DNA of 64,000 nt, from IMG/VR virus record IMGVR_UViG_3300013104_000001, positions 124,001 to 188,000 of that record, one strand, 5' to 3'. Every line of letters starts with the position of its first letter. Positions within the stretch are counted from its first letter, which is position 1. Positions 55,548 through 64,000 of this stretch are shown here, piece by piece. The notes beneath the pieces were generated by a model. That model saw nothing but the letters and a program-made list of their open reading frames with translations. It searched no databases and was not told the DNA's origin. The translations under genes and the position numbers were made by a program.

Positions 55548-56516
55548 ATGGATAAGAAATTACCAGGTCAAGATAAGCCAGAAGGCGTTACTACCAAACT
55601 GACAGACGCTTTTGGTAGTAAAGGTGTAGCGGTGCAGGTAACCCCTGAAAACGAACTGCCGCAGGATGCAGAAGGGAACATTGCTGATTTGCTGCGTGTC
55701 GGTAATGATAGTCTGAACCCTCACAGCCCAGGTATGGGTGGCGGTGCTCGAGGTATGATGTTTGGTGAGGTACCGCCACGATCCAACGCTAACCCGCTCG
55801 GTATCGAATCAATGGAAGAGCTCGATTCGCTGAAAGGTACGCTTAATCAGGTATTGTCAGATGATCAGAAAAATGCACTCGGCATGCTGGGTGAACTGAT
55901 TGATGGAAAATTCGACAACGAATATCCTGATGTCGTATACCTGACTATCGCGGTACCGGTAGATGCGGGTAAGACAATGGGGCGTAAAGCTATGCTGGAG
56001 AAACTTCTGGCAGAAACTCCACCGGGTGGCATTAGCGGTCATTGGAATCACCCTGTTCAAGCTGCGCGACTGACAGACCATCATGTGTGTATTGCTATCG
56101 ATGATGAAGGAGATGGGTCATTGACGAAACTGCTGTTCCGTGAATACCCTACTTCTATCGGAACCGATGACGCTGCAAAAGAACAACAGTTGCGGTATTT
56201 GCTGGATACTCACCCCGTGCGCCCTAGCGACAGTGTGCTTAACGCAAATGTGTACTACAGCAAGAACTTCTCGCCGTTGTCACTTGCTACCATCCGTGCG
56301 CCATTACCTATATCGGGTAATAAGTTCGTACGGTATGGTACGTACTGCGAACGTCTGGCGACACTAGAGACCGAGCTCGTTGAAATTGACGGTGTTAAAA
56401 TGGAACGGTTACTGGCGATGACATTGTTTAGTCTCGCTGGTGATAAGTCCAACATTACCCTGTACAGTCTTGATGACGGTCCTGAACTGTTTATTTTAGT
56501 CAAGGTAAACAACTAA
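55548..56516 (+). CDS. hypothetical acidic protein
   Basis: ATG at 55548 after AAGGAG; the upstream TTG start would overlap the previous gene. Confidence 0.75.
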   Translation: MDKKLPGQDKPEGVTTKLTDAFGSKGVAVQVTPENELPQDAEGNIADLLRVGNDSLNPHSPGMGGGARGMMFGEVPPRSNANPLGIESMEELDSLKGTLNQVLSDDQKNALGMLGELIDGKFDNEYPDVVYLTIAVPVDAGKTMGRKAMLEKLLAETPPGGISGHWNHPVQAARLTDHHVCIAIDDEGDGSLTKLLFREYPTSIGTDDAAKEQQLRYLLDTHPVRPSDSVLNANVYYSKNFSPLSLATIRAPLPISGNKFVRYGTYCERLATLETELVEIDGVKMERLLAMTLFSLAGDKSNITLYSLDDGPELFILVKVNN

Positions 56517-56522
56517 CTAATT

Positions 56523-56548
56523 GGCGGGGGTAAAACCCCGCCTTTTAT
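56523..56548 (+). terminator. intrinsic terminator
   Basis: GGCGGGG-GTAAAA-CCCCGCC-TTTTATT. Confidence 0.8.
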
Positions 56549-56549
56549 T

Positions 56550-56830
56550 CTGATTTATTTTTTGGTTTTAAATCAAATATACTATTACGTCAAATATGTA
56601 AAAACTATGTAATTGTCGACATAAGTGACTTAATAGTACTGAATGAACTTATTATCTAAAAAAAAAATATATTAATATATTAGTAATAAGCGTAAGAGTA
56701 AATTTTCGTAGGAAATTTATGAATTACGTTGGATAAAAGGAGAAATCAGACTGGGGTCTGATTTCTCCTAAATTGAATGTAAATGAATGAGTTGTTCATG
56801 TATTTTAGACGGCGCGCGGAAGCTGCGCGG
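56550..56830. other. very AT-rich non-coding region with palindromes
   Basis: A-run leading into the perfect palindrome AATATATTAATATATT (56666-56681); 14-bp hairpin at 56738-56769. Confidence 0.6.
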
Positions 56831-56932
56831 ACTCCGTCCTTGCCCTCTATGTGAATGTTATGGATGAATCCATCCAACCTTCCCGGACTCCTTTATAGTC
56901 TCAGAAGGATACCATCTCTCATTATAGAGGTC

Positions 56933-57741: not shown

Positions 57742-58485
57742 ATGGATAAAATCGCTTATATTCAAGAAGATGTCCGAGGGTACGTTTATTGGGAATCTAA
57801 TCTGCTACGTCAGTATCTTGAGCATCGTCATCCTGATGTCATTATTATCTCGTTATCTCGTGACGAACTCTTTCGAACACAGGACCAGGGTATCACCCCA
57901 TTTGCGGTATCGGGTAATTTCGATTTCGTTGATCGTCTCTTAGCTATGTCCAATAATCCACATCCTACCTTACTGCCTGACTACCCTGAAGAGCTCCAAG
58001 GGTACCTGCATCGCAAGGTAGAGTCCGGTACGTTAAGGGATCTGACGTTAGAACGCTGTCCGGTGTTTGTTAAACCTAAATACCAGAAACTCTTTACTGG
58101 GTTTGTTTGTGATGATCCTTTTGATTATCGGTTTAAATCTCATCGGGTCAATAACAACGAACCGTTATGGTTTAGTGAAGTGGTGAACTGGGTGTCTGAA
58201 TGGCGTGTGTATGTAGTCAATGGTAAAATTGGTTACATGTCTCATTACAACGGATTACGGGCTGCTAAACCTCGACTGAAACGTGTGGAGGAGATGATCT
58301 CTAAACTATCTGCACAGAACTACGTAATGGATATTGGTGTCTTAAGCAATGGCCGAGCTGCATTGATCGAAGTCAATGATGGCGTTGCGGTGGGCGCGTA
58401 TGAGGGTTGCCATGCAAACGTGTATGGCGAACTGTTGGTTAACCGGTGGCAGGAAATAATGAAGGAGCGAGACAGCTATGTCTAA
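57742..58485 (+). CDS. ATP-grasp protein, R2K clade (DUF4343-like)
   Basis: DYPEELQGYLHR, PVFVKP..QKLFTGFV, SEVV...SEWRVYVVNG, YVMDIG, LIEVND. Confidence 0.85.
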   Translation: MDKIAYIQEDVRGYVYWESNLLRQYLEHRHPDVIIISLSRDELFRTQDQGITPFAVSGNFDFVDRLLAMSNNPHPTLLPDYPEELQGYLHRKVESGTLRDLTLERCPVFVKPKYQKLFTGFVCDDPFDYRFKSHRVNNNEPLWFSEVVNWVSEWRVYVVNGKIGYMSHYNGLRAAKPRLKRVEEMISKLSAQNYVMDIGVLSNGRAALIEVNDGVAVGAYEGCHANVYGELLVNRWQEIMKERDSYV

Positions 58486-58885
58486 ATACGAAAAGAATCA
58501 TTTATTCAATTTGTTCCAAGAAGAGCGTGTTAAAAATACGTTCCATATGTTCGACGCTGTCTACAAGCATATCGACAACGTCATCGCCTCGAAGGGCACG
58601 GGATTGATTGTCAGTAAAATGCCTAACTCCTGGCGCAGTAACTGGGTGCTTAATGAACATTGCCATGGCACGGTCACGTTGTATGAAACTGGACTATTAC
58701 TTAACTATACCTGTATTGGTCAGGAAGGTAAACCTCTTGAGTATTTCAACGAGGAGAGTGTTGTGCGTTATCACGACCTGGATAAACTTGTCCCAATTGG
58801 CGGGATGGTTATCAAGAGCAATATGTTCATGGATCTGATGGGCAGATATGAACTGCAAGTTATACTGGGGTTTGATGATGAGTGA
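58478..58885 (+). CDS. hypothetical protein, tandem paralog 1
   Basis: Overlaps the ATP-grasp stop; aligns with the next gene. Confidence 0.75.
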   Translation: MSKYEKNHLFNLFQEERVKNTFHMFDAVYKHIDNVIASKGTGLIVSKMPNSWRSNWVLNEHCHGTVTLYETGLLLNYTCIGQEGKPLEYFNEESVVRYHDLDKLVPIGGMVIKSNMFMDLMGRYELQVILGFDDE

Positions 58886-59279
58886 GCTTAGCAAAGACGA
58901 TCTGAATAAACATTTTAAAGCAGCGGGATTAAAAGACGCGATTCCTTTTTATCATGCCGTCTGTGAACTGATCAGGCGGGCACTGGCCAATGACCCTACA
59001 TTGCATGCTGTCAGAAAGACGGAGCAGCTGTGGACATTTGATTACAAGTACAGTGCGCTTTATAAAGCTGAGATCAGTCTGTTCTTAAACGGCGCTAAGA
59101 TCCGCTACAGCACCACTCGACGCATTGAAGGCAGTCACTTCAACGAGCAGGCTATTCGTCAGCAACACAAACTCAACAAACTCTTCCCGATCAATGGCAT
59201 GAACATCAAAAGCATCACCTACGGCGACGGTGCGGGCGGGTTTGAATTCTCTGTATTCCTTGAGGTACCTAATGAATGA
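58878..59279 (+). CDS. hypothetical protein, tandem paralog 2
   Basis: FNEQAIRQQHKLNKLFPINGMNIKS versus FNEESVVRYHDLDKLVPIGGMVIKS in paralog 1. Confidence 0.75.
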   Translation: MSELSKDDLNKHFKAAGLKDAIPFYHAVCELIRRALANDPTLHAVRKTEQLWTFDYKYSALYKAEISLFLNGAKIRYSTTRRIEGSHFNEQAIRQQHKLNKLFPINGMNIKSITYGDGAGGFEFSVFLEVPNE

Positions 59280-59664
59280 ACTGCTTAAACCCGAAGATGT
59301 CCGGGCGATCTTTCCTAATCGTGACCCAATCGATACCACGGCCTTGATTGCTAAGGCCAGGGAGATGTTTGACTTGGTCCGCACTCAACAAGACAGTCAT
59401 CGCTTGGTATGGTATCCCGATCACGTCACAACGATGGCGCTGTGTGGTCAGTATACGTTACAGCTCGATGTCTACTATAGTGGCGATGTTGAACTTAGCA
59501 TTAATACTGAAGTGGACAAACCGCAGCTTGGGGAAGAGGCAGGTAAGCAACTACTCTTCACTGATCGTATTCTTCCTCTTACTGGCTATACCGGGCAATT
59601 AGAATACTGGGGACCTACCCCTGGCATTGGTGAAATTATCTTGATGACTTACCGCTACGCTTAG
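59272..59664 (+). CDS. hypothetical protein, possible distant paralog 3
   Basis: ATG at 59272 after GAGG, overlapping the upstream stop. Confidence 0.7.
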   Translation: MNELLKPEDVRAIFPNRDPIDTTALIAKAREMFDLVRTQQDSHRLVWYPDHVTTMALCGQYTLQLDVYYSGDVELSINTEVDKPQLGEEAGKQLLFTDRILPLTGYTGQLEYWGPTPGIGEIILMTYRYA

Positions 59665-61200: not shown

Positions 61201-61476
61201 ATGAAACTTACTTTATGCCAAGCTAATGGATATTCGCTCATCCACGCTGGATACCACAGTCACACCCCGGTCAACAACGTCACCTTGCTGGAAGGCGAAG
61301 TACGCTGGGAATCTAACCGTATGTTCATCGGCGATAAAGAGATCGCTCAAGTGAAATCTAACGGCCATGTGCATCTGAACGCAACCGTGATCCGATCTAA
61401 CCTCGGGTACATCACAACCATCCGCAATCAGATCCGCTTTATGTTCCGCACCAGAAAGCCGGCTACACTGCATTAA
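61201..61476 (+). CDS. hypothetical protein
   Basis: AAGGAG RBS. Confidence 0.7.
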   Translation: MKLTLCQANGYSLIHAGYHSHTPVNNVTLLEGEVRWESNRMFIGDKEIAQVKSNGHVHLNATVIRSNLGYITTIRNQIRFMFRTRKPATLH

Positions 61477-61477
61477 C

Positions 61478-61511
61478 GAGGAGGAGGGATTACCCTCCTC
61501 CTCCTATGCTG
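61478..61511 (+). terminator. hairpin with TATGCTG tail
   Basis: GAGGAGGAGGG-ATTA-CCCTCCTCCTC-C-TATGCTG. Confidence 0.8.
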
Positions 61512-61551
61512 TTCTTTTATTTTTTGTATTTAAATACAGAAGTCCACATGG

Positions 61552-61804
61552 TATGTGAGTCGACCCAGACCACAATAGTAACAATAATCCAAATAAGCTT
61601 ACGAGACTTTGGCGGGGGATGCGGATATAACGGTGCGCACCCCCGTTCTTTTTTGGATAGTTACCCGAATCGGCTGGGCAGATCTAACAGATCCATTCGT
61701 TGCCACGGATGTCCTGCGGTGGTCTGCCAACCTGGCACCCCCCTTCCACCTGGGATCGGTCTTGATCTGTCCGGCCACCTAACTTTTATCAAGAGGGTGT
61801 TACG
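61552..61804 (+). ncRNA. candidate structured 5' leader / ncRNA
   Basis: Long-range pairing CAGACCAC (61566-73) / GTGGTCTG (61719-26) encloses several hairpins; anti-SD-like CACCC before the GAGGGTG RBS. Confidence 0.4.
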
Positions 61805-62137
61805 ATGAGCGACAACAACGAAGATATCAAGGTTACCAAACAACTGAGCGTCTCTGCTGCCGAACATGGCATCAAAGTACAGATCGATACACTGGCGCTG
61901 CGTGATGACGAGCAGTATAGCGATCCTACTAAGTATCAGGTGATCTCAACCGCTGTTGCCGAAACAGATGGCGAGCCCTTTACTGAAGGTCAGTTCAACG
62001 ATTTCCGTCGTTTCAATGACGAAGGCCATCTGCTGTTTGCTTTCTTCCCTGCCAGTGGCATCCTTGAGATCGCTCACGGTTATGAAGAGACCATCGATCT
62101 GACTGTGGTACTTACCCTGCGCGAGCGTCAGCAGTAA
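61805..62137 (+). CDS. hypothetical acidic protein
   Basis: GAGGG RBS; paralogous to the N-half of 62262..62825. Confidence 0.7.
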   Translation: MSDNNEDIKVTKQLSVSAAEHGIKVQIDTLALRDDEQYSDPTKYQVISTAVAETDGEPFTEGQFNDFRRFNDEGHLLFAFFPASGILEIAHGYEETIDLTVVLTLRERQQ

Positions 62138-62261: not shown

Positions 62262-62825
62262 ATGATTGTTGAGACTACAGTCAAAACAGATTCGTCTAAA
62301 CAACTGCGGTACCCTTTGATCACATTAGCGCTTACTGCGATTACCGAAGAGCAGCGTCAGCAGTATCCTGCTGTGACTTCTAAAGTAGTGCCTGTAATTG
62401 ACGGCGTGCAAAAGAAATTCCAGCCATCTCGGTTTGGCAACAAAAATGTTTTATCACTTTACGAAGATGATAAAATGCTCTTTGCGTATAATACCGAAAC
62501 TGGCATTATTCGTTTCAGTCCTGATTGTCAGAAAAAGGTGATCTTTGAGGTTACCTTGTATCTGTCTAAGCGGGCTAATGTACCAATGACTGAAGAAGAA
62601 CTCGTCAAGGGCGGTGCATACACGCACTATAAAGGCGGATGCTATAAGGTTGTTGGGTTTACGAACCTACATGCAAAAGACAACCCGCAGTTCATCCCGC
62701 AGGTCGTGTATCATTCGATCAGCCCTAATGATCCCGATAACTGGTACTCACGCCCTATGGCGGAGTTCCTGGAAAAGTTCAGGCCGATGACGCCTGAAGA
62801 TGTACTGACCTCAACAGGTCAATAA
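62262..62825 (+). CDS. protein with C-terminal DUF1653 domain
   Basis: GGAYTHYKGGCYKVV...VVYHSI...WYSRPMAEFLEKF. Confidence 0.75.
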   Translation: MIVETTVKTDSSKQLRYPLITLALTAITEEQRQQYPAVTSKVVPVIDGVQKKFQPSRFGNKNVLSLYEDDKMLFAYNTETGIIRFSPDCQKKVIFEVTLYLSKRANVPMTEEELVKGGAYTHYKGGCYKVVGFTNLHAKDNPQFIPQVVYHSISPNDPDNWYSRPMAEFLEKFRPMTPEDVLTSTGQ

Positions 62826-62892: not shown

Positions 62893-63996
62893 ATGACTGT
62901 AATTGTTAAGCTTACCTCCGGCGAAAACAAAGCCGATCAAAATGTCAGCAAAGGGTTTGAACTGATCCCTATCGCTGCAGGTATGCGTGTTGTATTTAGC
63001 CGTGATGAAGAAGGCGATGGCTGGTTGAATGTCCATGGTGATAACGGGCATGGCGAACAGCATGTGATGATGGCTATTCCTGTACTGGGTAATGCCTACG
63101 TCATGGACTCTGGTAAGACCATCGCCAGTTTCTCATCGGCAAACATCCCCGATCCTAAACCAATCGACCCGCTTGATTACTATCGTGGTCAAAGTGACAT
63201 CCAGGAACCAAAGGATGAAGACGGTTTTGTCATTCGTGGTGACGGCGCGGTGCACTTACATGGTGATGTTAAAGTCACGGGCAGTTCCGCTAACCAATCA
63301 CAGGTTGACGAATCATACCCGGATGATATCACCGACCCGCAGGACGAGCGTCTGAAGAAAGCCGATAGTTCGCGCGTAAATGAGACGTATAAGACTATCT
63401 GCATGATTCTCGCTGGCGAACCTTCAATACCGGACAATCGCGAAGAACACATGTTTGTGATGGGTTTAGCTGCTGCCATTGAAAGCTTCCGTGCTATGAA
63501 GACAAAACATCGTCCAACCATTGGATTGTCTTATATCGGTAGCGTAGTGTGTCCTCGTGATAAGCTCGACAAGCTACGTAATCATTTCCGTCTGGTCGAC
63601 TCACCGGTGTCGTTAGACATCAGATCAAATGATGATAATTACATCACCGAATATTCTATCCAGACTTACTACAACCGCAACGATGTAGATGAAGCGGAGA
63701 TGTTGCTGTTGCGTAATCTGCGCAGTAAGCAGACTGGTCTGGTGAAGAACGTGATCGACAAGATCATCAAGTATTTCAAAGCCGGCGTGTCAGTCGTGCC
63801 ATTGGAACCTGCAACGTTGATCACCAATACTCAACGTGAGCAGATCAAACGCGAGCTTTACAAAGTGCTGGGTCGTCATTTCAGCTTTATTCTGGCTGAT
63901 GAAAAGGACACTGGTGAAAACCCAAACTCTGACGAGGTGTTTGGTCCTGAATCGGCGCTGTACACGCATGTGGTAATCAGATTTGACCGCGGTTAG
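62893..63996 (+). CDS. hypothetical multidomain protein
   Basis: AAGGA RBS; N-terminal domain ending GNAYVMDSGKTIASF, then an acidic linker. Confidence 0.75.
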   Translation: MTVIVKLTSGENKADQNVSKGFELIPIAAGMRVVFSRDEEGDGWLNVHGDNGHGEQHVMMAIPVLGNAYVMDSGKTIASFSSANIPDPKPIDPLDYYRGQSDIQEPKDEDGFVIRGDGAVHLHGDVKVTGSSANQSQVDESYPDDITDPQDERLKKADSSRVNETYKTICMILAGEPSIPDNREEHMFVMGLAAAIESFRAMKTKHRPTIGLSYIGSVVCPRDKLDKLRNHFRLVDSPVSLDIRSNDDNYITEYSIQTYYNRNDVDEAEMLLLRNLRSKQTGLVKNVIDKIIKYFKAGVSVVPLEPATLITNTQREQIKRELYKVLGRHFSFILADEKDTGENPNSDEVFGPESALYTHVVIRFDRG

Positions 63997-64000
63997 TATT

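What the first reader, a model, noticed from the sequence alone, without database searches (positions are those of the whole stretch)
61525..61804. ~250-nt GC-rich structured leader with internal terminator-like hairpin and anti-SD
Seen: after the 14-bp palindrome TGTATTTAAATACA and TATG (61552), CAGACCAC pairs with GTGGTCTG about 150 nt away. This encloses a hairpin GGCGGGGG.TGCG/CGCACCCCCGTT followed by CTTTTTT (61611-61654) and a GGAT..GTTA/TAAC..ATCC arm. Further on, CACCC..CTT and TCTTGAT can each pair across the RBS region ATCAAGAGGGTG of gene 61805. Inference: a riboswitch- or attenuator-like cis-regulator, or a phage sRNA.
Basis: partly seen in the sequence, partly recalled or inferred. 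Interest (0 to 1): 0.6.

Follow-up and report, generated by a model that had tools for sequence, protein, structure and literature searches.

The report
Two-part structured RNA leader, jumbo phage
The 328-base gap in front of a small jumbo-phage gene does not code for protein; it holds two conserved RNA elements, a roughly 100-nt small-RNA-like unit that ends at a strong terminator and a Y-shaped folded domain that ends in a hairpin covering the gene's ribosome-binding site, and neither matches any catalogued RNA family.

Summary
The window comes from a 287-kb jumbo phage related to Erwinia Agricanvirus (RAY, Ea35-70, AH06). The gap 61477-61804 is non-coding, because ORF 61506-61808 is broken in relatives. 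It has two modules.

1. A unit of about 100 nt (61555-61654). A conserved TATG lies at 61552-61555, which is the phiKZ late-promoter motif. It is followed by a 5' hairpin, a conserved A-rich single strand (AAUAGUAACAAUAAU) and a GC-rich terminator with U6. The terminator stem is 100% paired in 9 distinct sequences and has 4 compensatory pairs. This unit persists where module 2 is absent, and weak hits lie at the same position in a sister clade (SA002, pEa_SNUABM_48).

2. A Y-shaped domain (61672-61776; helices P1, P1b, P2, P3, P3a), followed directly by a hairpin that pairs with the Shine-Dalgarno sequence. In 8 distinct sequences 94% of cells are paired, against 34-45% in slid controls, and 22 of 37 pairs show compensatory changes.

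Rfam gives no match.

Most likely reading: a terminated small RNA plus a read-through leader that controls translation of gene 61805. Transcripts, ligand and targets are untested. This is a new member of known kinds (a phage 5'UTR-derived sRNA and a cis-regulatory leader).

The parts
61478..61525 (+). Terminator-like element of the upstream operon. It is a hairpin, GAGGAGGAGGG (61478-61488) paired with CCCTCCTCCTC (61493-61503), followed by C-TATGCTG and a T-rich run.
   Evidence: Sequence. It belongs to a genome-wide class of GC hairpins followed by YTTATGCCGTCT. TATGCC occurs 26 times in intergenic DNA against 4.9 expected.
61526..61555 (+). Promoter-like conserved block: GTATTTAAATAC, then 14 nt, then TATG (61552-61555). 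The inferred transcription start is G61555.
   Evidence: 97% identical to L040 and 77% to RAY. TATGT is conserved in all homologues. The phiKZ late-promoter rule is TATG with the start at G (PMC4666361). TATGTA is enriched in this genome's intergenic DNA, 22 against 3.5. The composite motif TAC-N12-17-TATGT is not enriched genome-wide, 30 against 34. The start site is inferred, not shown.
61555..61573 (+). 5' hairpin of the small-RNA-like unit (GUG.GUC / GAC.CAC, loop GACCCA).
   Evidence: The stem is kept and the loop varies: GACCCA, AGUCGU, UAUCAC. One U-A pair is a U.G wobble in 4 of 9 sequences. It is predicted in the MFE and the centroid fold.
61574..61610 (+). Conserved single-stranded A-rich segment. 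AAU AGU AAC AAU AAU (61574-61588) is five ARN triplets. It is followed by CCAAAUAAGCUU and a variable linker.
   Evidence: Invariant AUAGU.AC.A.AA and AA.UAAG in 9 distinct sequences. Unpaired in the window's MFE and centroid folds. Similar ARY tracts occur in the SA002 and pEa_SNUABM_48 units.
61611..61654 (+). Intrinsic terminator. The stem is 61612-61623 with 61636-61646, with A61619 bulged. The loop carries a conserved UAACGG. U6 lies at 61649-61654.
   Evidence: 100% of cells paired, 4 pairs with changes on both sides and one paired deletion in AH06. The simple terminator scan did not flag it; that scan allows loops of only 3-8 nt.
61655..61671 (+). Poorly conserved spacer between the terminator and the Y-shaped domain.
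   Evidence: 47% identity to RAY and 24% to AH06. AH06 carries about 44 extra nt here.
61672..61776 (+). Y-shaped structured domain:
- P1 61672-61684 / 61764-61776
- P1b 61689-61693 / 61758-61762
- P2 61694-61700 / 61705-61711
- P3 61712-61716 + 61718-61722 / 61746-61755
- P3a 61726-61728 / 61734-61736
- unpaired CACCCCCC at 61736-61743 (C61736 also closes P3a); nearly invariant (CACUCCC in L146)
   Evidence: RNAalifold and pair counts: 94.2% paired against 34-45% in slid controls, 22 of 37 pairs compensatory, P1 and P3 100% paired in 8 distinct sequences. Independent single-sequence MFE folds give P1b, P2 and P3a in all 8 distinct sequences, P1 in all but AH06 and P3 in all but L147. P1b and P3a were checked by eye on those folds.
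61777..61804 (+). Hairpin that occludes the ribosome-binding site, directly 3' of P1. ACCU (61777-61780) pairs with GGGU (61795-61798) inside the Shine-Dalgarno AAGAGGGUG. AUG is at 61805.
   Evidence: Helix 5 is 84-93% paired with compensatory changes. RAY has the 7-bp UUCCUUA/UAAGGAA, of which its MFE fold draws six pairs. L144, which lacks the Y domain, keeps AUCC/GGAU.
61805..62137 (+). Downstream gene (110 aa, phrog_11510, unknown function), the presumed regulated target.
   Evidence: The predicted fold is a small beta-sandwich (pLDDT 84) with no confident structural match: best Foldseek E 0.17, best VIA Z 5.8.

Best explanation
The gap 61477-61804 is a non-coding, two-module RNA leader of a jumbo phage.

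After the upstream operon's terminator, transcription most likely starts at the G of a conserved TATG (61555), by analogy with phiKZ-type non-virion RNA polymerase promoters.

Module 1 (61555-61654) consists of a 5' hairpin, a conserved unpaired A-rich tract and a strong GC-rich terminator with a U tail. Most transcripts would stop here. This would yield a small RNA of about 100 nt and at the same time limit expression of the downstream gene.

Transcripts that read through carry module 2. It is a Y-shaped domain of about 105 nt (P1, P1b, P2, P3, P3a) whose closing helix P1 abuts a short hairpin that pairs with the Shine-Dalgarno sequence of gene 61805. Translation would then be set or regulated by the stability of this fold, or by a factor that binds it.

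Shown here: the region is non-coding, both modules are conserved, and the helices covary.

Inferred: the start site, termination in vivo, read-through, and the effect on translation.
For: Synteny and gap
- The gap is kept in Agricanvirus phages, in AH06 and in six metagenomic relatives.

Non-coding
- ORF 61506-61808 is interrupted in RAY and AH06.
- It is frame-shifted by a 2-nt indel in L040.

Module 1
- The covariance model R1 gives one copy per genome at E 1e-13 to 1e-24.
- The terminator is 100% paired with 4 compensatory pairs.
- TATGT is conserved, and TATGTA is 6-fold enriched in intergenic DNA.
- The phiKZ rule is taken from PMC4666361.
- The unit is kept in L144, where module 2 is absent.
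- Weak hits lie at the same position in SA002 (E 0.017) and pEa_SNUABM_48 (E 0.036), directly after the 258-nt CDS that occupies the position of the upstream ORF. Its homology to that ORF was not tested.

Module 2
- 94.2% of cells are paired against 34-45% in slid controls.
- 22 of 37 pairs are compensatory, and 0 of 500 shuffles reach the observed covariation score or percentage paired.
- The window and L040 differ at 10 of the 105 positions of this domain; all three differences in P1 keep their pairs, two by changes on both sides.
- Single-sequence MFE folds agree across lineages.

Other
- Between the window and L040 the leader is 90-100% identical, while the downstream CDS is only 73% identical.
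- Small RNAs made by premature termination in 5'UTRs are reported for the related jumbo phage 201phi2-1 (PMC11512511).
Against: - There are no transcript data.
- The composite promoter motif is not enriched genome-wide.
- The simple terminator scan did not call the hairpin.
- No promoter for gene 61805 was found downstream of the terminator in the window or in RAY, so its expression depends on an unproven read-through.
- The sister clade appears to have a second TATGT after the terminator, which suggests the two modules need not be co-transcribed.
- No mutually exclusive alternative fold that would make a switch was found conserved.
- The covariation rests on about 6-8 lineages of one phage clade.
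Confidence: 0.55

Rival explanations
1. Module 1 is an Hfq-binding small RNA of the class II type, or an Hfq decoy. Its (ARN)5 tract would bind the distal face of host Hfq and its terminator U tail the proximal face. This would either use Hfq or titrate it during infection. On this reading the link to the downstream gene is secondary.
For: The window tract AAU AGU AAC AAU AAU is five perfect ARN triplets, and it is unpaired in the predicted fold. By the definition in PMC10920880 (five triplets, at most 2 mismatches; U-rich terminator ends bind the proximal face) all relatives qualify. A-rich ARY tracts followed by a terminator are the only features shared with the SA002 and pEa_SNUABM_48 units. 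The named isolates' hosts, Erwinia and Salmonella, are Enterobacterales, which encode Hfq; this and the class II concept come from my own knowledge.
Against: The first (A) position of the triplets is not strictly kept: GAC in RAY, GAU in L145-L147, GAU and CAU in L144. (ARN)5 tracts are common in this genome, 45 observed against 21 in shuffles. No binding data exist. The register of the alignment with the sister clade is assumed.
Confidence: 0.25
2. The Y-shaped domain is a sensor, either a riboswitch aptamer for a small ligand or an operator for a phage or host RNA-binding protein. It would switch translation of gene 61805 through the adjacent Shine-Dalgarno hairpin.
For: The fold is a three-way junction with strong covariation. 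Conserved unpaired nucleotides sit in the junction and in an internal loop: CACCCCC (CACUCCC in L146), a bulged C in P3, and the U.G of J3/1. P1 is directly adjacent to the Shine-Dalgarno hairpin in all lineages.
Against: There is no Rfam match. No conserved alternative pairing forms an expression platform. The domain is dispensable in L144, where the gene keeps only a short Shine-Dalgarno hairpin. The domain sits after the terminator, not before it. The regulated protein gives no functional clue.
Confidence: 0.15
3. The long irregular helix (P1 + P1b stacked on P2 or P3) is a processing or stability element, for example an RNase III site as in the T7 intergenic sites or the lambda N leader. 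It would separate the upstream small RNA from the mRNA and tune the mRNA's stability or translation.
For: There are 18 bp of P1 + P1b with a small internal loop, coaxial with further helices, placed between an RNA gene and a CDS. The analogy to T7 and lambda comes from my own knowledge.
Against: No cleavage data exist. RNase III substrates need little sequence conservation, yet several unpaired nucleotides here are invariant. Nothing tested here speaks to this reading specifically.
Confidence: 0.12
4. The short RNA has no function of its own. The terminator is an attenuator that a phage antiterminator, or a switch between the two phage RNA polymerases, overrides at a given time of infection.
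For: No other promoter for gene 61805 is evident in the window or in RAY. Antitermination has been proposed for 201phi2-1 (PMC11512511).
Against: The unpaired tract and the terminator loop (UAACGG) are more conserved than a mere attenuator would need. The unit persists in the sister clade, where the next gene seems to have its own TATGT.
Confidence: 0.2
5. The region encodes the 100-aa protein of ORF 61506-61808.
For: An open frame exists in the window.
Against: The frame is broken in RAY and AH06. It is shifted by a 2-nt indel in the close relative L040. Indels that are not multiples of three are common in the alignment. The substitutions are compensatory for RNA pairing.
Confidence: 0.02

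Closest known systems
5'UTR-derived small RNAs made by premature termination in jumbo phages (201phi2-1 sRNA005 / phiKZ sRNA upstream of gp182; PMC11512511)
   Same: In both, a transcription start is followed within less than 250 nt by a terminator, upstream of a phage gene, and the element is conserved among related giant phages with a conserved predicted fold.
   Different: The phage clade and the downstream gene differ (a 110-aa ORFan, not the tail protein family). No sequence relation was found. Here there are no transcript data, but there is a second, covarying Y-shaped domain after the terminator.
Class II Hfq-binding sRNAs of Enterobacteria (ChiX, MgrR, CyaR type)
   Same: The length is about 100 nt, with an unpaired (ARN)n tract and a Rho-independent terminator with a U tail.
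   Different: Phage-encoded and of unknown target. The ARN pattern is imperfect in several relatives. Hfq binding is untested.
Structured leaders that occlude the Shine-Dalgarno sequence (rpoS leader, lambda N leader, phage translational operators)
   Same: A long structured 5'UTR whose last hairpin pairs with the ribosome-binding site. In the read-through transcript, an upstream A-rich (ARN) motif is present, as in rpoS.
   Different: No activating sRNA or protein is known. An internal terminator splits the leader. The fold (a three-way junction closed by a 13-bp helix) is not that of any of these.
Riboswitches with a three-way junction and a translational expression platform
   Same: A covarying multi-helix domain with conserved unpaired nucleotides lies directly next to a Shine-Dalgarno hairpin.
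   Different: No Rfam family matches. No ligand and no conserved alternative fold are known. The domain lies downstream of the terminator and is dispensable in one natural variant.

Membership tests
Any Rfam 15 family | A covariance-model match at or near the family's gathering score. | tested here: not met
   The best hits in the region are E 3.9-7 at 15.7-21.1 bits against gathering scores of 45-56. Nothing turned up in the homologous loci of RAY, AH06 and L040. ARAGORN finds no tRNA or tmRNA.
Intrinsic (Rho-independent) terminator | A GC-rich hairpin directly followed by a U tract. | tested here: met
   An 11-bp stem (8 G-C pairs) followed by UUCUUUUUU. 100% of cells are paired, with 4 compensatory pairs in 9 sequences. 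The consensus scan missed it; that scan allows loops of only 3-8 nt. Termination itself is not testable here.
phiKZ-type late promoter | A TATG motif with transcription starting at its G (PMC4666361). | tested here: inconclusive
   TATG is present and conserved in all homologues. TATGTA is enriched in intergenic DNA, 22 against 3.5. The paper states that TATG is necessary but not sufficient. The start site cannot be tested with these tools.
5'UTR-derived sRNA by premature termination | A mapped transcription start followed by a mapped transcript end less than 250 nt downstream, with enriched reads. | not testable with these tools
   The sequence architecture fits (61555 to 61654).
Class II Hfq-binding sRNA | An unpaired (ARN)n tract for the distal face of Hfq. 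| tested here: inconclusive
   5 of 5 triplets in the window and L040, 4 of 5 in RAY, AH06 and L145-L147, 3 of 5 in L144. Such tracts are not rare in the genome.
Class II Hfq-binding sRNA | A terminator hairpin with a 3' U tail for the proximal face, and demonstrated Hfq binding. | not testable with these tools
   A U6-U11 tail is present in all. Binding needs an experiment.
Riboswitch | A conserved aptamer with covarying helices and conserved unpaired nucleotides. | tested here: met
Riboswitch | An expression platform with mutually exclusive folds coupled to the aptamer. For transcriptional types, the aptamer lies upstream of the terminator. | tested here: not met
   The domain lies 3' of the terminator. 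No partner for either terminator arm occurs in 61555-61610. No alternative pairing is conserved between the window and RAY; this was inspected by eye on the alignments.
Riboswitch | Specific ligand binding. | not testable with these tools
   Needs in-line probing, SHAPE or ITC.

The most novel reading that the evidence does not exclude
The Y-shaped domain is a new class of phage-specific RNA switch, sensing a ligand or a protein, that gates translation of a fast-evolving ORFan in nucleus-forming jumbo phages. It is paired with a phage small RNA whose ARN tract and U tail occupy both faces of host Hfq.
Probability: 0.1. Interest if true: 0.75.

Novelty: new member of a known kind. Interest (0 to 1): 0.5.

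Why it matters
Very few conserved non-coding RNAs are known in jumbo phages, and for the clade of Erwinia phage RAY I found no published transcriptome or RNA element. This work gives two concrete, covariation-backed RNA motifs with coordinates, covariance models and a natural deletion variant. That makes the following directly testable: whether such phages make regulatory small RNAs, how intrinsic terminators act on their own polymerases, and how translation of a rapidly diverging accessory gene is controlled. If the A-rich unit binds Hfq, it would be a lytic-phage RNA that engages the host's central RNA chaperone.

Tried and rejected
- **Rfam and tRNA scans.** cmscan on the window region and on three homologous loci found nothing. 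The ARAGORN scan was negative.
- **Pattern scans.** The first DNA pattern was mistyped and found nothing. The corrected pattern gave 118 metagenome stretches, of which only L021 (the window's own contig), L040 and L074 were real.
- **Protein-guided search of IMG/VR.** It returned only RAY itself.
- **Simple terminator and promoter scan.** It found no terminator and one sigma-70-like site, which is below the number expected by chance.
- **Trans-target search.**
  - A scan for 10-mer complementarity in the window phage, RAY and AH06 genomes gave only the antisense strand of the locus itself and scattered matches. I judge these to be at chance level, and no site was shared between genomes.
  - Host targets could not be searched.
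- **Second copies.** The models R1 and R2 find no second copy in the genome and no copy in Proteus phage 10. R2 finds nothing in SA002 or pEa_SNUABM_48.
- **Downstream protein.** Pfam gave nothing, PHROGs only an unknown-function family, and the fold searches gave no confident match.
- **Considered and rejected.**
  - Coding ORF 61506-61808.
  - The downstream CACCCCC acting as an anti-terminator (it lies after the terminator).
  - CsrA sponge (GGA motifs are not conserved).
  - Hammerhead or other ribozymes (no core motifs, no Rfam hit).

Full report
**Context**

The window is bases 124001-188000 of a 287,406-bp virus record with direct terminal repeats. Its closest named relatives are the Erwinia jumbo phages of the genus Agricanvirus (RAY, Ea35-70, Special G and others) and Erwinia phage AH06. 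The finding region is about 77% identical to them at the DNA level, and the terminase is about 90% identical in protein.

The finding lies in a 328-nt gap between two small genes on the + strand. These are 61201-61476 (91 aa) and 61805-62137 (110 aa), both of unknown function. The two genes and a gap of 326-376 nt are kept in RAY, Bosolaphorus, MadMel, Ea35-70 and AH06. They are also kept in metagenomic relatives found by a DNA pattern (L040, L074) and through homologues of the downstream protein (L145-L148).

**Check of the observation**

The region folds better than shuffled sequence, with z = -2.83.

Comparative analysis keeps some of the proposed pairings and rejects others. The terminator-like hairpin at 61611-61654 is real. 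The long-range CAGACCAC/GTGGTCTG helix and the GGAT..GTTA/TAAC..ATCC arm are not conserved, and they clash with helices that covary. The 14-bp palindrome is not kept as a palindrome in relatives.

**The region is non-coding**

ORF 61506-61808 (100 aa) spans the gap in the window. In RAY and AH06 the same stretch holds only short frames that do not correspond. In the close relative L040 a 2-nt insertion moves the reading frame. The alignment has many indels that are not multiples of three.

**Module 1: a small-RNA-like unit (61555-61654)**

All homologues share the following layout:
- TATGT, followed by a short 5' hairpin (GGUC/GACC type) with a variable loop;
- an unpaired A-rich stretch with invariant AUAGU.AC.A.AA and AA.UAAG;
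- a variable linker;
- a GC-rich hairpin with a conserved loop sequence UAACGG;
- a U tract of 6-11 residues.

In phiKZ the non-virion RNA polymerase starts at the G of a TATG motif (PMC4666361). TATGTA is six-fold enriched in this genome's intergenic DNA (22 against 3.5), and many instances lie upstream of genes. I therefore infer a start at G61555. This is not shown, and a wider composite motif is not enriched.

A covariance model of the unit (R1) finds exactly one copy in the window's genome, in AH06 and in each fetched relative locus, at E 1e-13 to 1e-24. In 9 distinct sequences the terminator stem is 100% paired with 4 pairs changed on both sides. AH06 has lost one base pair by a paired deletion.

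Two observations suggest the unit is more than a leader:
- In L144 the gene starts 37 nt after the terminator and the downstream domain is missing, yet the unit is intact.
- In the next clade out (terminase about 73% identical) R1 gives weak hits in Salmonella phage SA002 (E 0.017) and Erwinia phage pEa_SNUABM_48 (E 0.036). Both hits lie directly after the 258-nt CDS that occupies the position of the upstream ORF; its homology to that ORF was not tested. Both have a TATGT, an A-rich tract of ARY triplets and a GC hairpin with a long U run.

In Proteus phage 10 the same position holds six tRNA genes behind an AAAAATTAC-N15-TATGTAAGG block. This locus therefore holds RNA genes in the wider group.

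**Module 2: a Y-shaped domain and a Shine-Dalgarno hairpin (61672-61804)**

RNAalifold on seven homologues predicted four elements:
- a 13-bp closing helix P1 (61672-61684 with 61764-61776);
- a hairpin P2;
- a longer arm P3 with an apical P3a;
- directly after P1, a hairpin whose 3' strand lies in the Shine-Dalgarno sequence.

Pair counts on the MAFFT alignment gave 94.2% paired cells against 33-41% when partners were slid. 18 of 37 pairs were compensatory, and no shuffle out of 500 reached the observed covariation score or percentage paired.

I then built a model (R2) and added more lineages. With 8 distinct sequences, 94.2% of cells are paired and 22 of 37 pairs are compensatory. P1 and P3 are 100% paired. 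That alignment was fitted to the model, which favours the structure.

The window and L040 are 90% identical over this domain. All three of their differences in P1 keep the pair, two of them by changes on both sides.

Single-sequence MFE folds were made independently for the 8 distinct sequences. P1b, P2 and P3a appear in all of them. P1 appears in all but AH06, and P3 in all but L147, which folds that stretch differently. The folds add a 4-5-bp helix P1b, which is AGAUC/GGUCU in the window, GGUC/GACC in RAY and GAUC/GAUC in AH06.

Conserved unpaired nucleotides include the bulged C of P3 and CACCCCC in the 3' internal loop of P3 (window 61736-61743; CACUCCC in L146). The CA of J1/2 is kept in all but L145.

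The Shine-Dalgarno hairpin differs in detail between lineages but is always present. It is ACCU/GGGU in the window, a 7-bp UUCCUUA/UAAGGAA in RAY, and AUCC/GGAU in L144.

Primary sequence identity of this module is low (55% to RAY, 43% to AH06) while the structure is kept, as expected of a structural RNA.

R2 finds one copy per genome and none in SA002, pEa_SNUABM_48 or Proteus phage 10. The domain therefore goes with the clade that has the 61805 gene family.

**Mechanism**

The arrangement is: promoter motif, a terminated unit of about 100 nt, a 17-nt spacer, the Y domain, the Shine-Dalgarno hairpin, and the gene.

No TATG lies between the terminator and the gene in the window or in RAY. The simplest reading is therefore that gene 61805 is expressed from transcripts that read through the terminator. 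The short product would be a small RNA, as reported for eight of eleven small RNAs in the jumbo phage 201phi2-1 (PMC11512511).

The Y domain is not placed to control the terminator, because it is transcribed afterwards. No anti-terminator sequence exists upstream. It is well placed to control translation, since P1 stacks directly on the hairpin that holds the ribosome-binding site.

Whether it acts constitutively, senses a factor or is a processing site cannot be told from sequence.

**What the short RNA may do**

Its best-conserved part is unpaired and reads AAU AGU AAC AAU AAU, which is five ARN triplets. Together with a U-tailed terminator this is the combination that binds the distal and proximal faces of Hfq (PMC10920880; the class II concept is from my own knowledge).

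The pattern is imperfect in relatives, and such tracts are common in this genome (45 against 21 expected). I keep this as a hypothesis at about 0.25.

A scan for complementary sites in the window phage, RAY and AH06 genomes found nothing beyond scattered matches that I judge to be at chance level, and no site shared between genomes. Host genomes could not be searched for targets.

**Comparison with known systems and novelty**

No Rfam family matches, either in the window or in the homologous loci.

The closest known kinds are:
- 5'UTR-derived phage small RNAs;
- enterobacterial Hfq-type small RNAs;
- leaders that occlude the Shine-Dalgarno sequence.

The riboswitch label fails on the placement of the domain and on the lack of an expression platform, although the domain itself has aptamer-like features.

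I rate this a new member of known kinds. Both RNA motifs appear to be undescribed; I found no literature on RNA elements or transcriptomes of Agricanvirus phages.

**Limits**

- There is no expression evidence.
- The covariation comes from about 6-8 lineages of one clade.
- P1b and P3a were judged from single-sequence folds and by eye, because the model-based alignment is offset by one column there.
- The downstream protein is a predicted small beta-sandwich (pLDDT 84) without a confident structural relative. It gives no clue to what is being regulated.

Noticed in passing
window 61478-61525 and dozens of other intergenic sites in the genome (G000): A recurrent motif occurs genome-wide: a GC-rich hairpin directly followed by YTTATGCCGTCT and often a T-rich run, for example at G000 9145, 44420, 50715, 93386 and 158617. 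TATGCC occurs 26 times in intergenic DNA against 4.9 expected. It looks like the phage's own terminator signature, and it contains the late-promoter TATG.
   Followed up: partly
L144:1287-1500 (Logan SRR29694015 contig, 190 kb): A natural variant. The small-RNA unit is intact (1365-1463), the whole Y-shaped domain is absent, and the gene starts 37 nt after the terminator with only a short AUCC/GGAU Shine-Dalgarno hairpin.
   Followed up: partly
L138:39178-39432 (Salmonella phage SA002) and L137:37640-37920 (Erwinia phage pEa_SNUABM_48): The sister clade has a related A-rich terminated unit. It is followed by a conserved hairpin (AUUCUGUU../..AACAGAAU), a conserved CGATTAAATTGATATGT block that looks like a second promoter, and a long-range helix (GUGUGCUGA/UCAGCACAC in SA002; GGUGUG.ACGAU/AUCGU..CACACC in pEa48) just before a 40-aa gene. 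This is an analogous but non-homologous structured leader.
   Followed up: partly
L006:1860-3600 (Proteus phage 10): After the homologue of the upstream ORF, this phage has AAAAATTAC-N15-TATGTAAGG and then six tRNA genes (Tyr, Asn, Met, Asp, Glu, His) instead of the leader and the 61805 gene family.
   Followed up: partly
window 61805-62137 compared with L040:1984-2313(-): Between the window and L040 the non-coding leader is 90-100% identical, but the downstream gene is only 73% identical in DNA. The cause could be a mosaic boundary or fast evolution of this ORFan.
   Followed up: no
window 63997-64000 and beyond (G000 187997-188040): A block similar to the promoter-like one, TATTTTTATAC-N15-TATGTAAC, lies just after gene 62893-63996. 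It resembles TATTTAAATAC-N14-TATGTGAG at 61527. Two such sites match the number expected by chance (2 against 2.25).
   Followed up: no
window 58478-59664: Tandem small paralogous genes. The proteins of 58478-58885 and 58848-59279 are 29% identical (E 1e-15), and 59230-59664 looks similar by eye. The protein of 61805 is weakly similar to the N-terminal part of the 62262-62825 protein (26% over 68 aa, E 0.001), whose C-terminus is DUF1653.
   Followed up: partly
window 57742-58485: A gene for an ATP-grasp protein of the R2K clade (PF18299, E 2e-33) lies a few genes upstream.
   Followed up: no
G000 192918 (window coordinate 68918, outside the window): A perfect 10-nt complement of the small RNA's CAAUAGUAAC lies at codons 4-7 of a gene (AGGAGTTTTGTCATGAGAAACGTTACTATTG). 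It is not matched in RAY or AH06, and I judge it compatible with chance.
   Followed up: partly
window 56516-56599 (- strand): A weak hit of model R1 (E 0.08). It is another GC hairpin, GGCGGGG UUUUAC CCCCGCC, in a 338-nt intergenic gap (56517-56854). It is probably a terminator, not a homologue.
   Followed up: no
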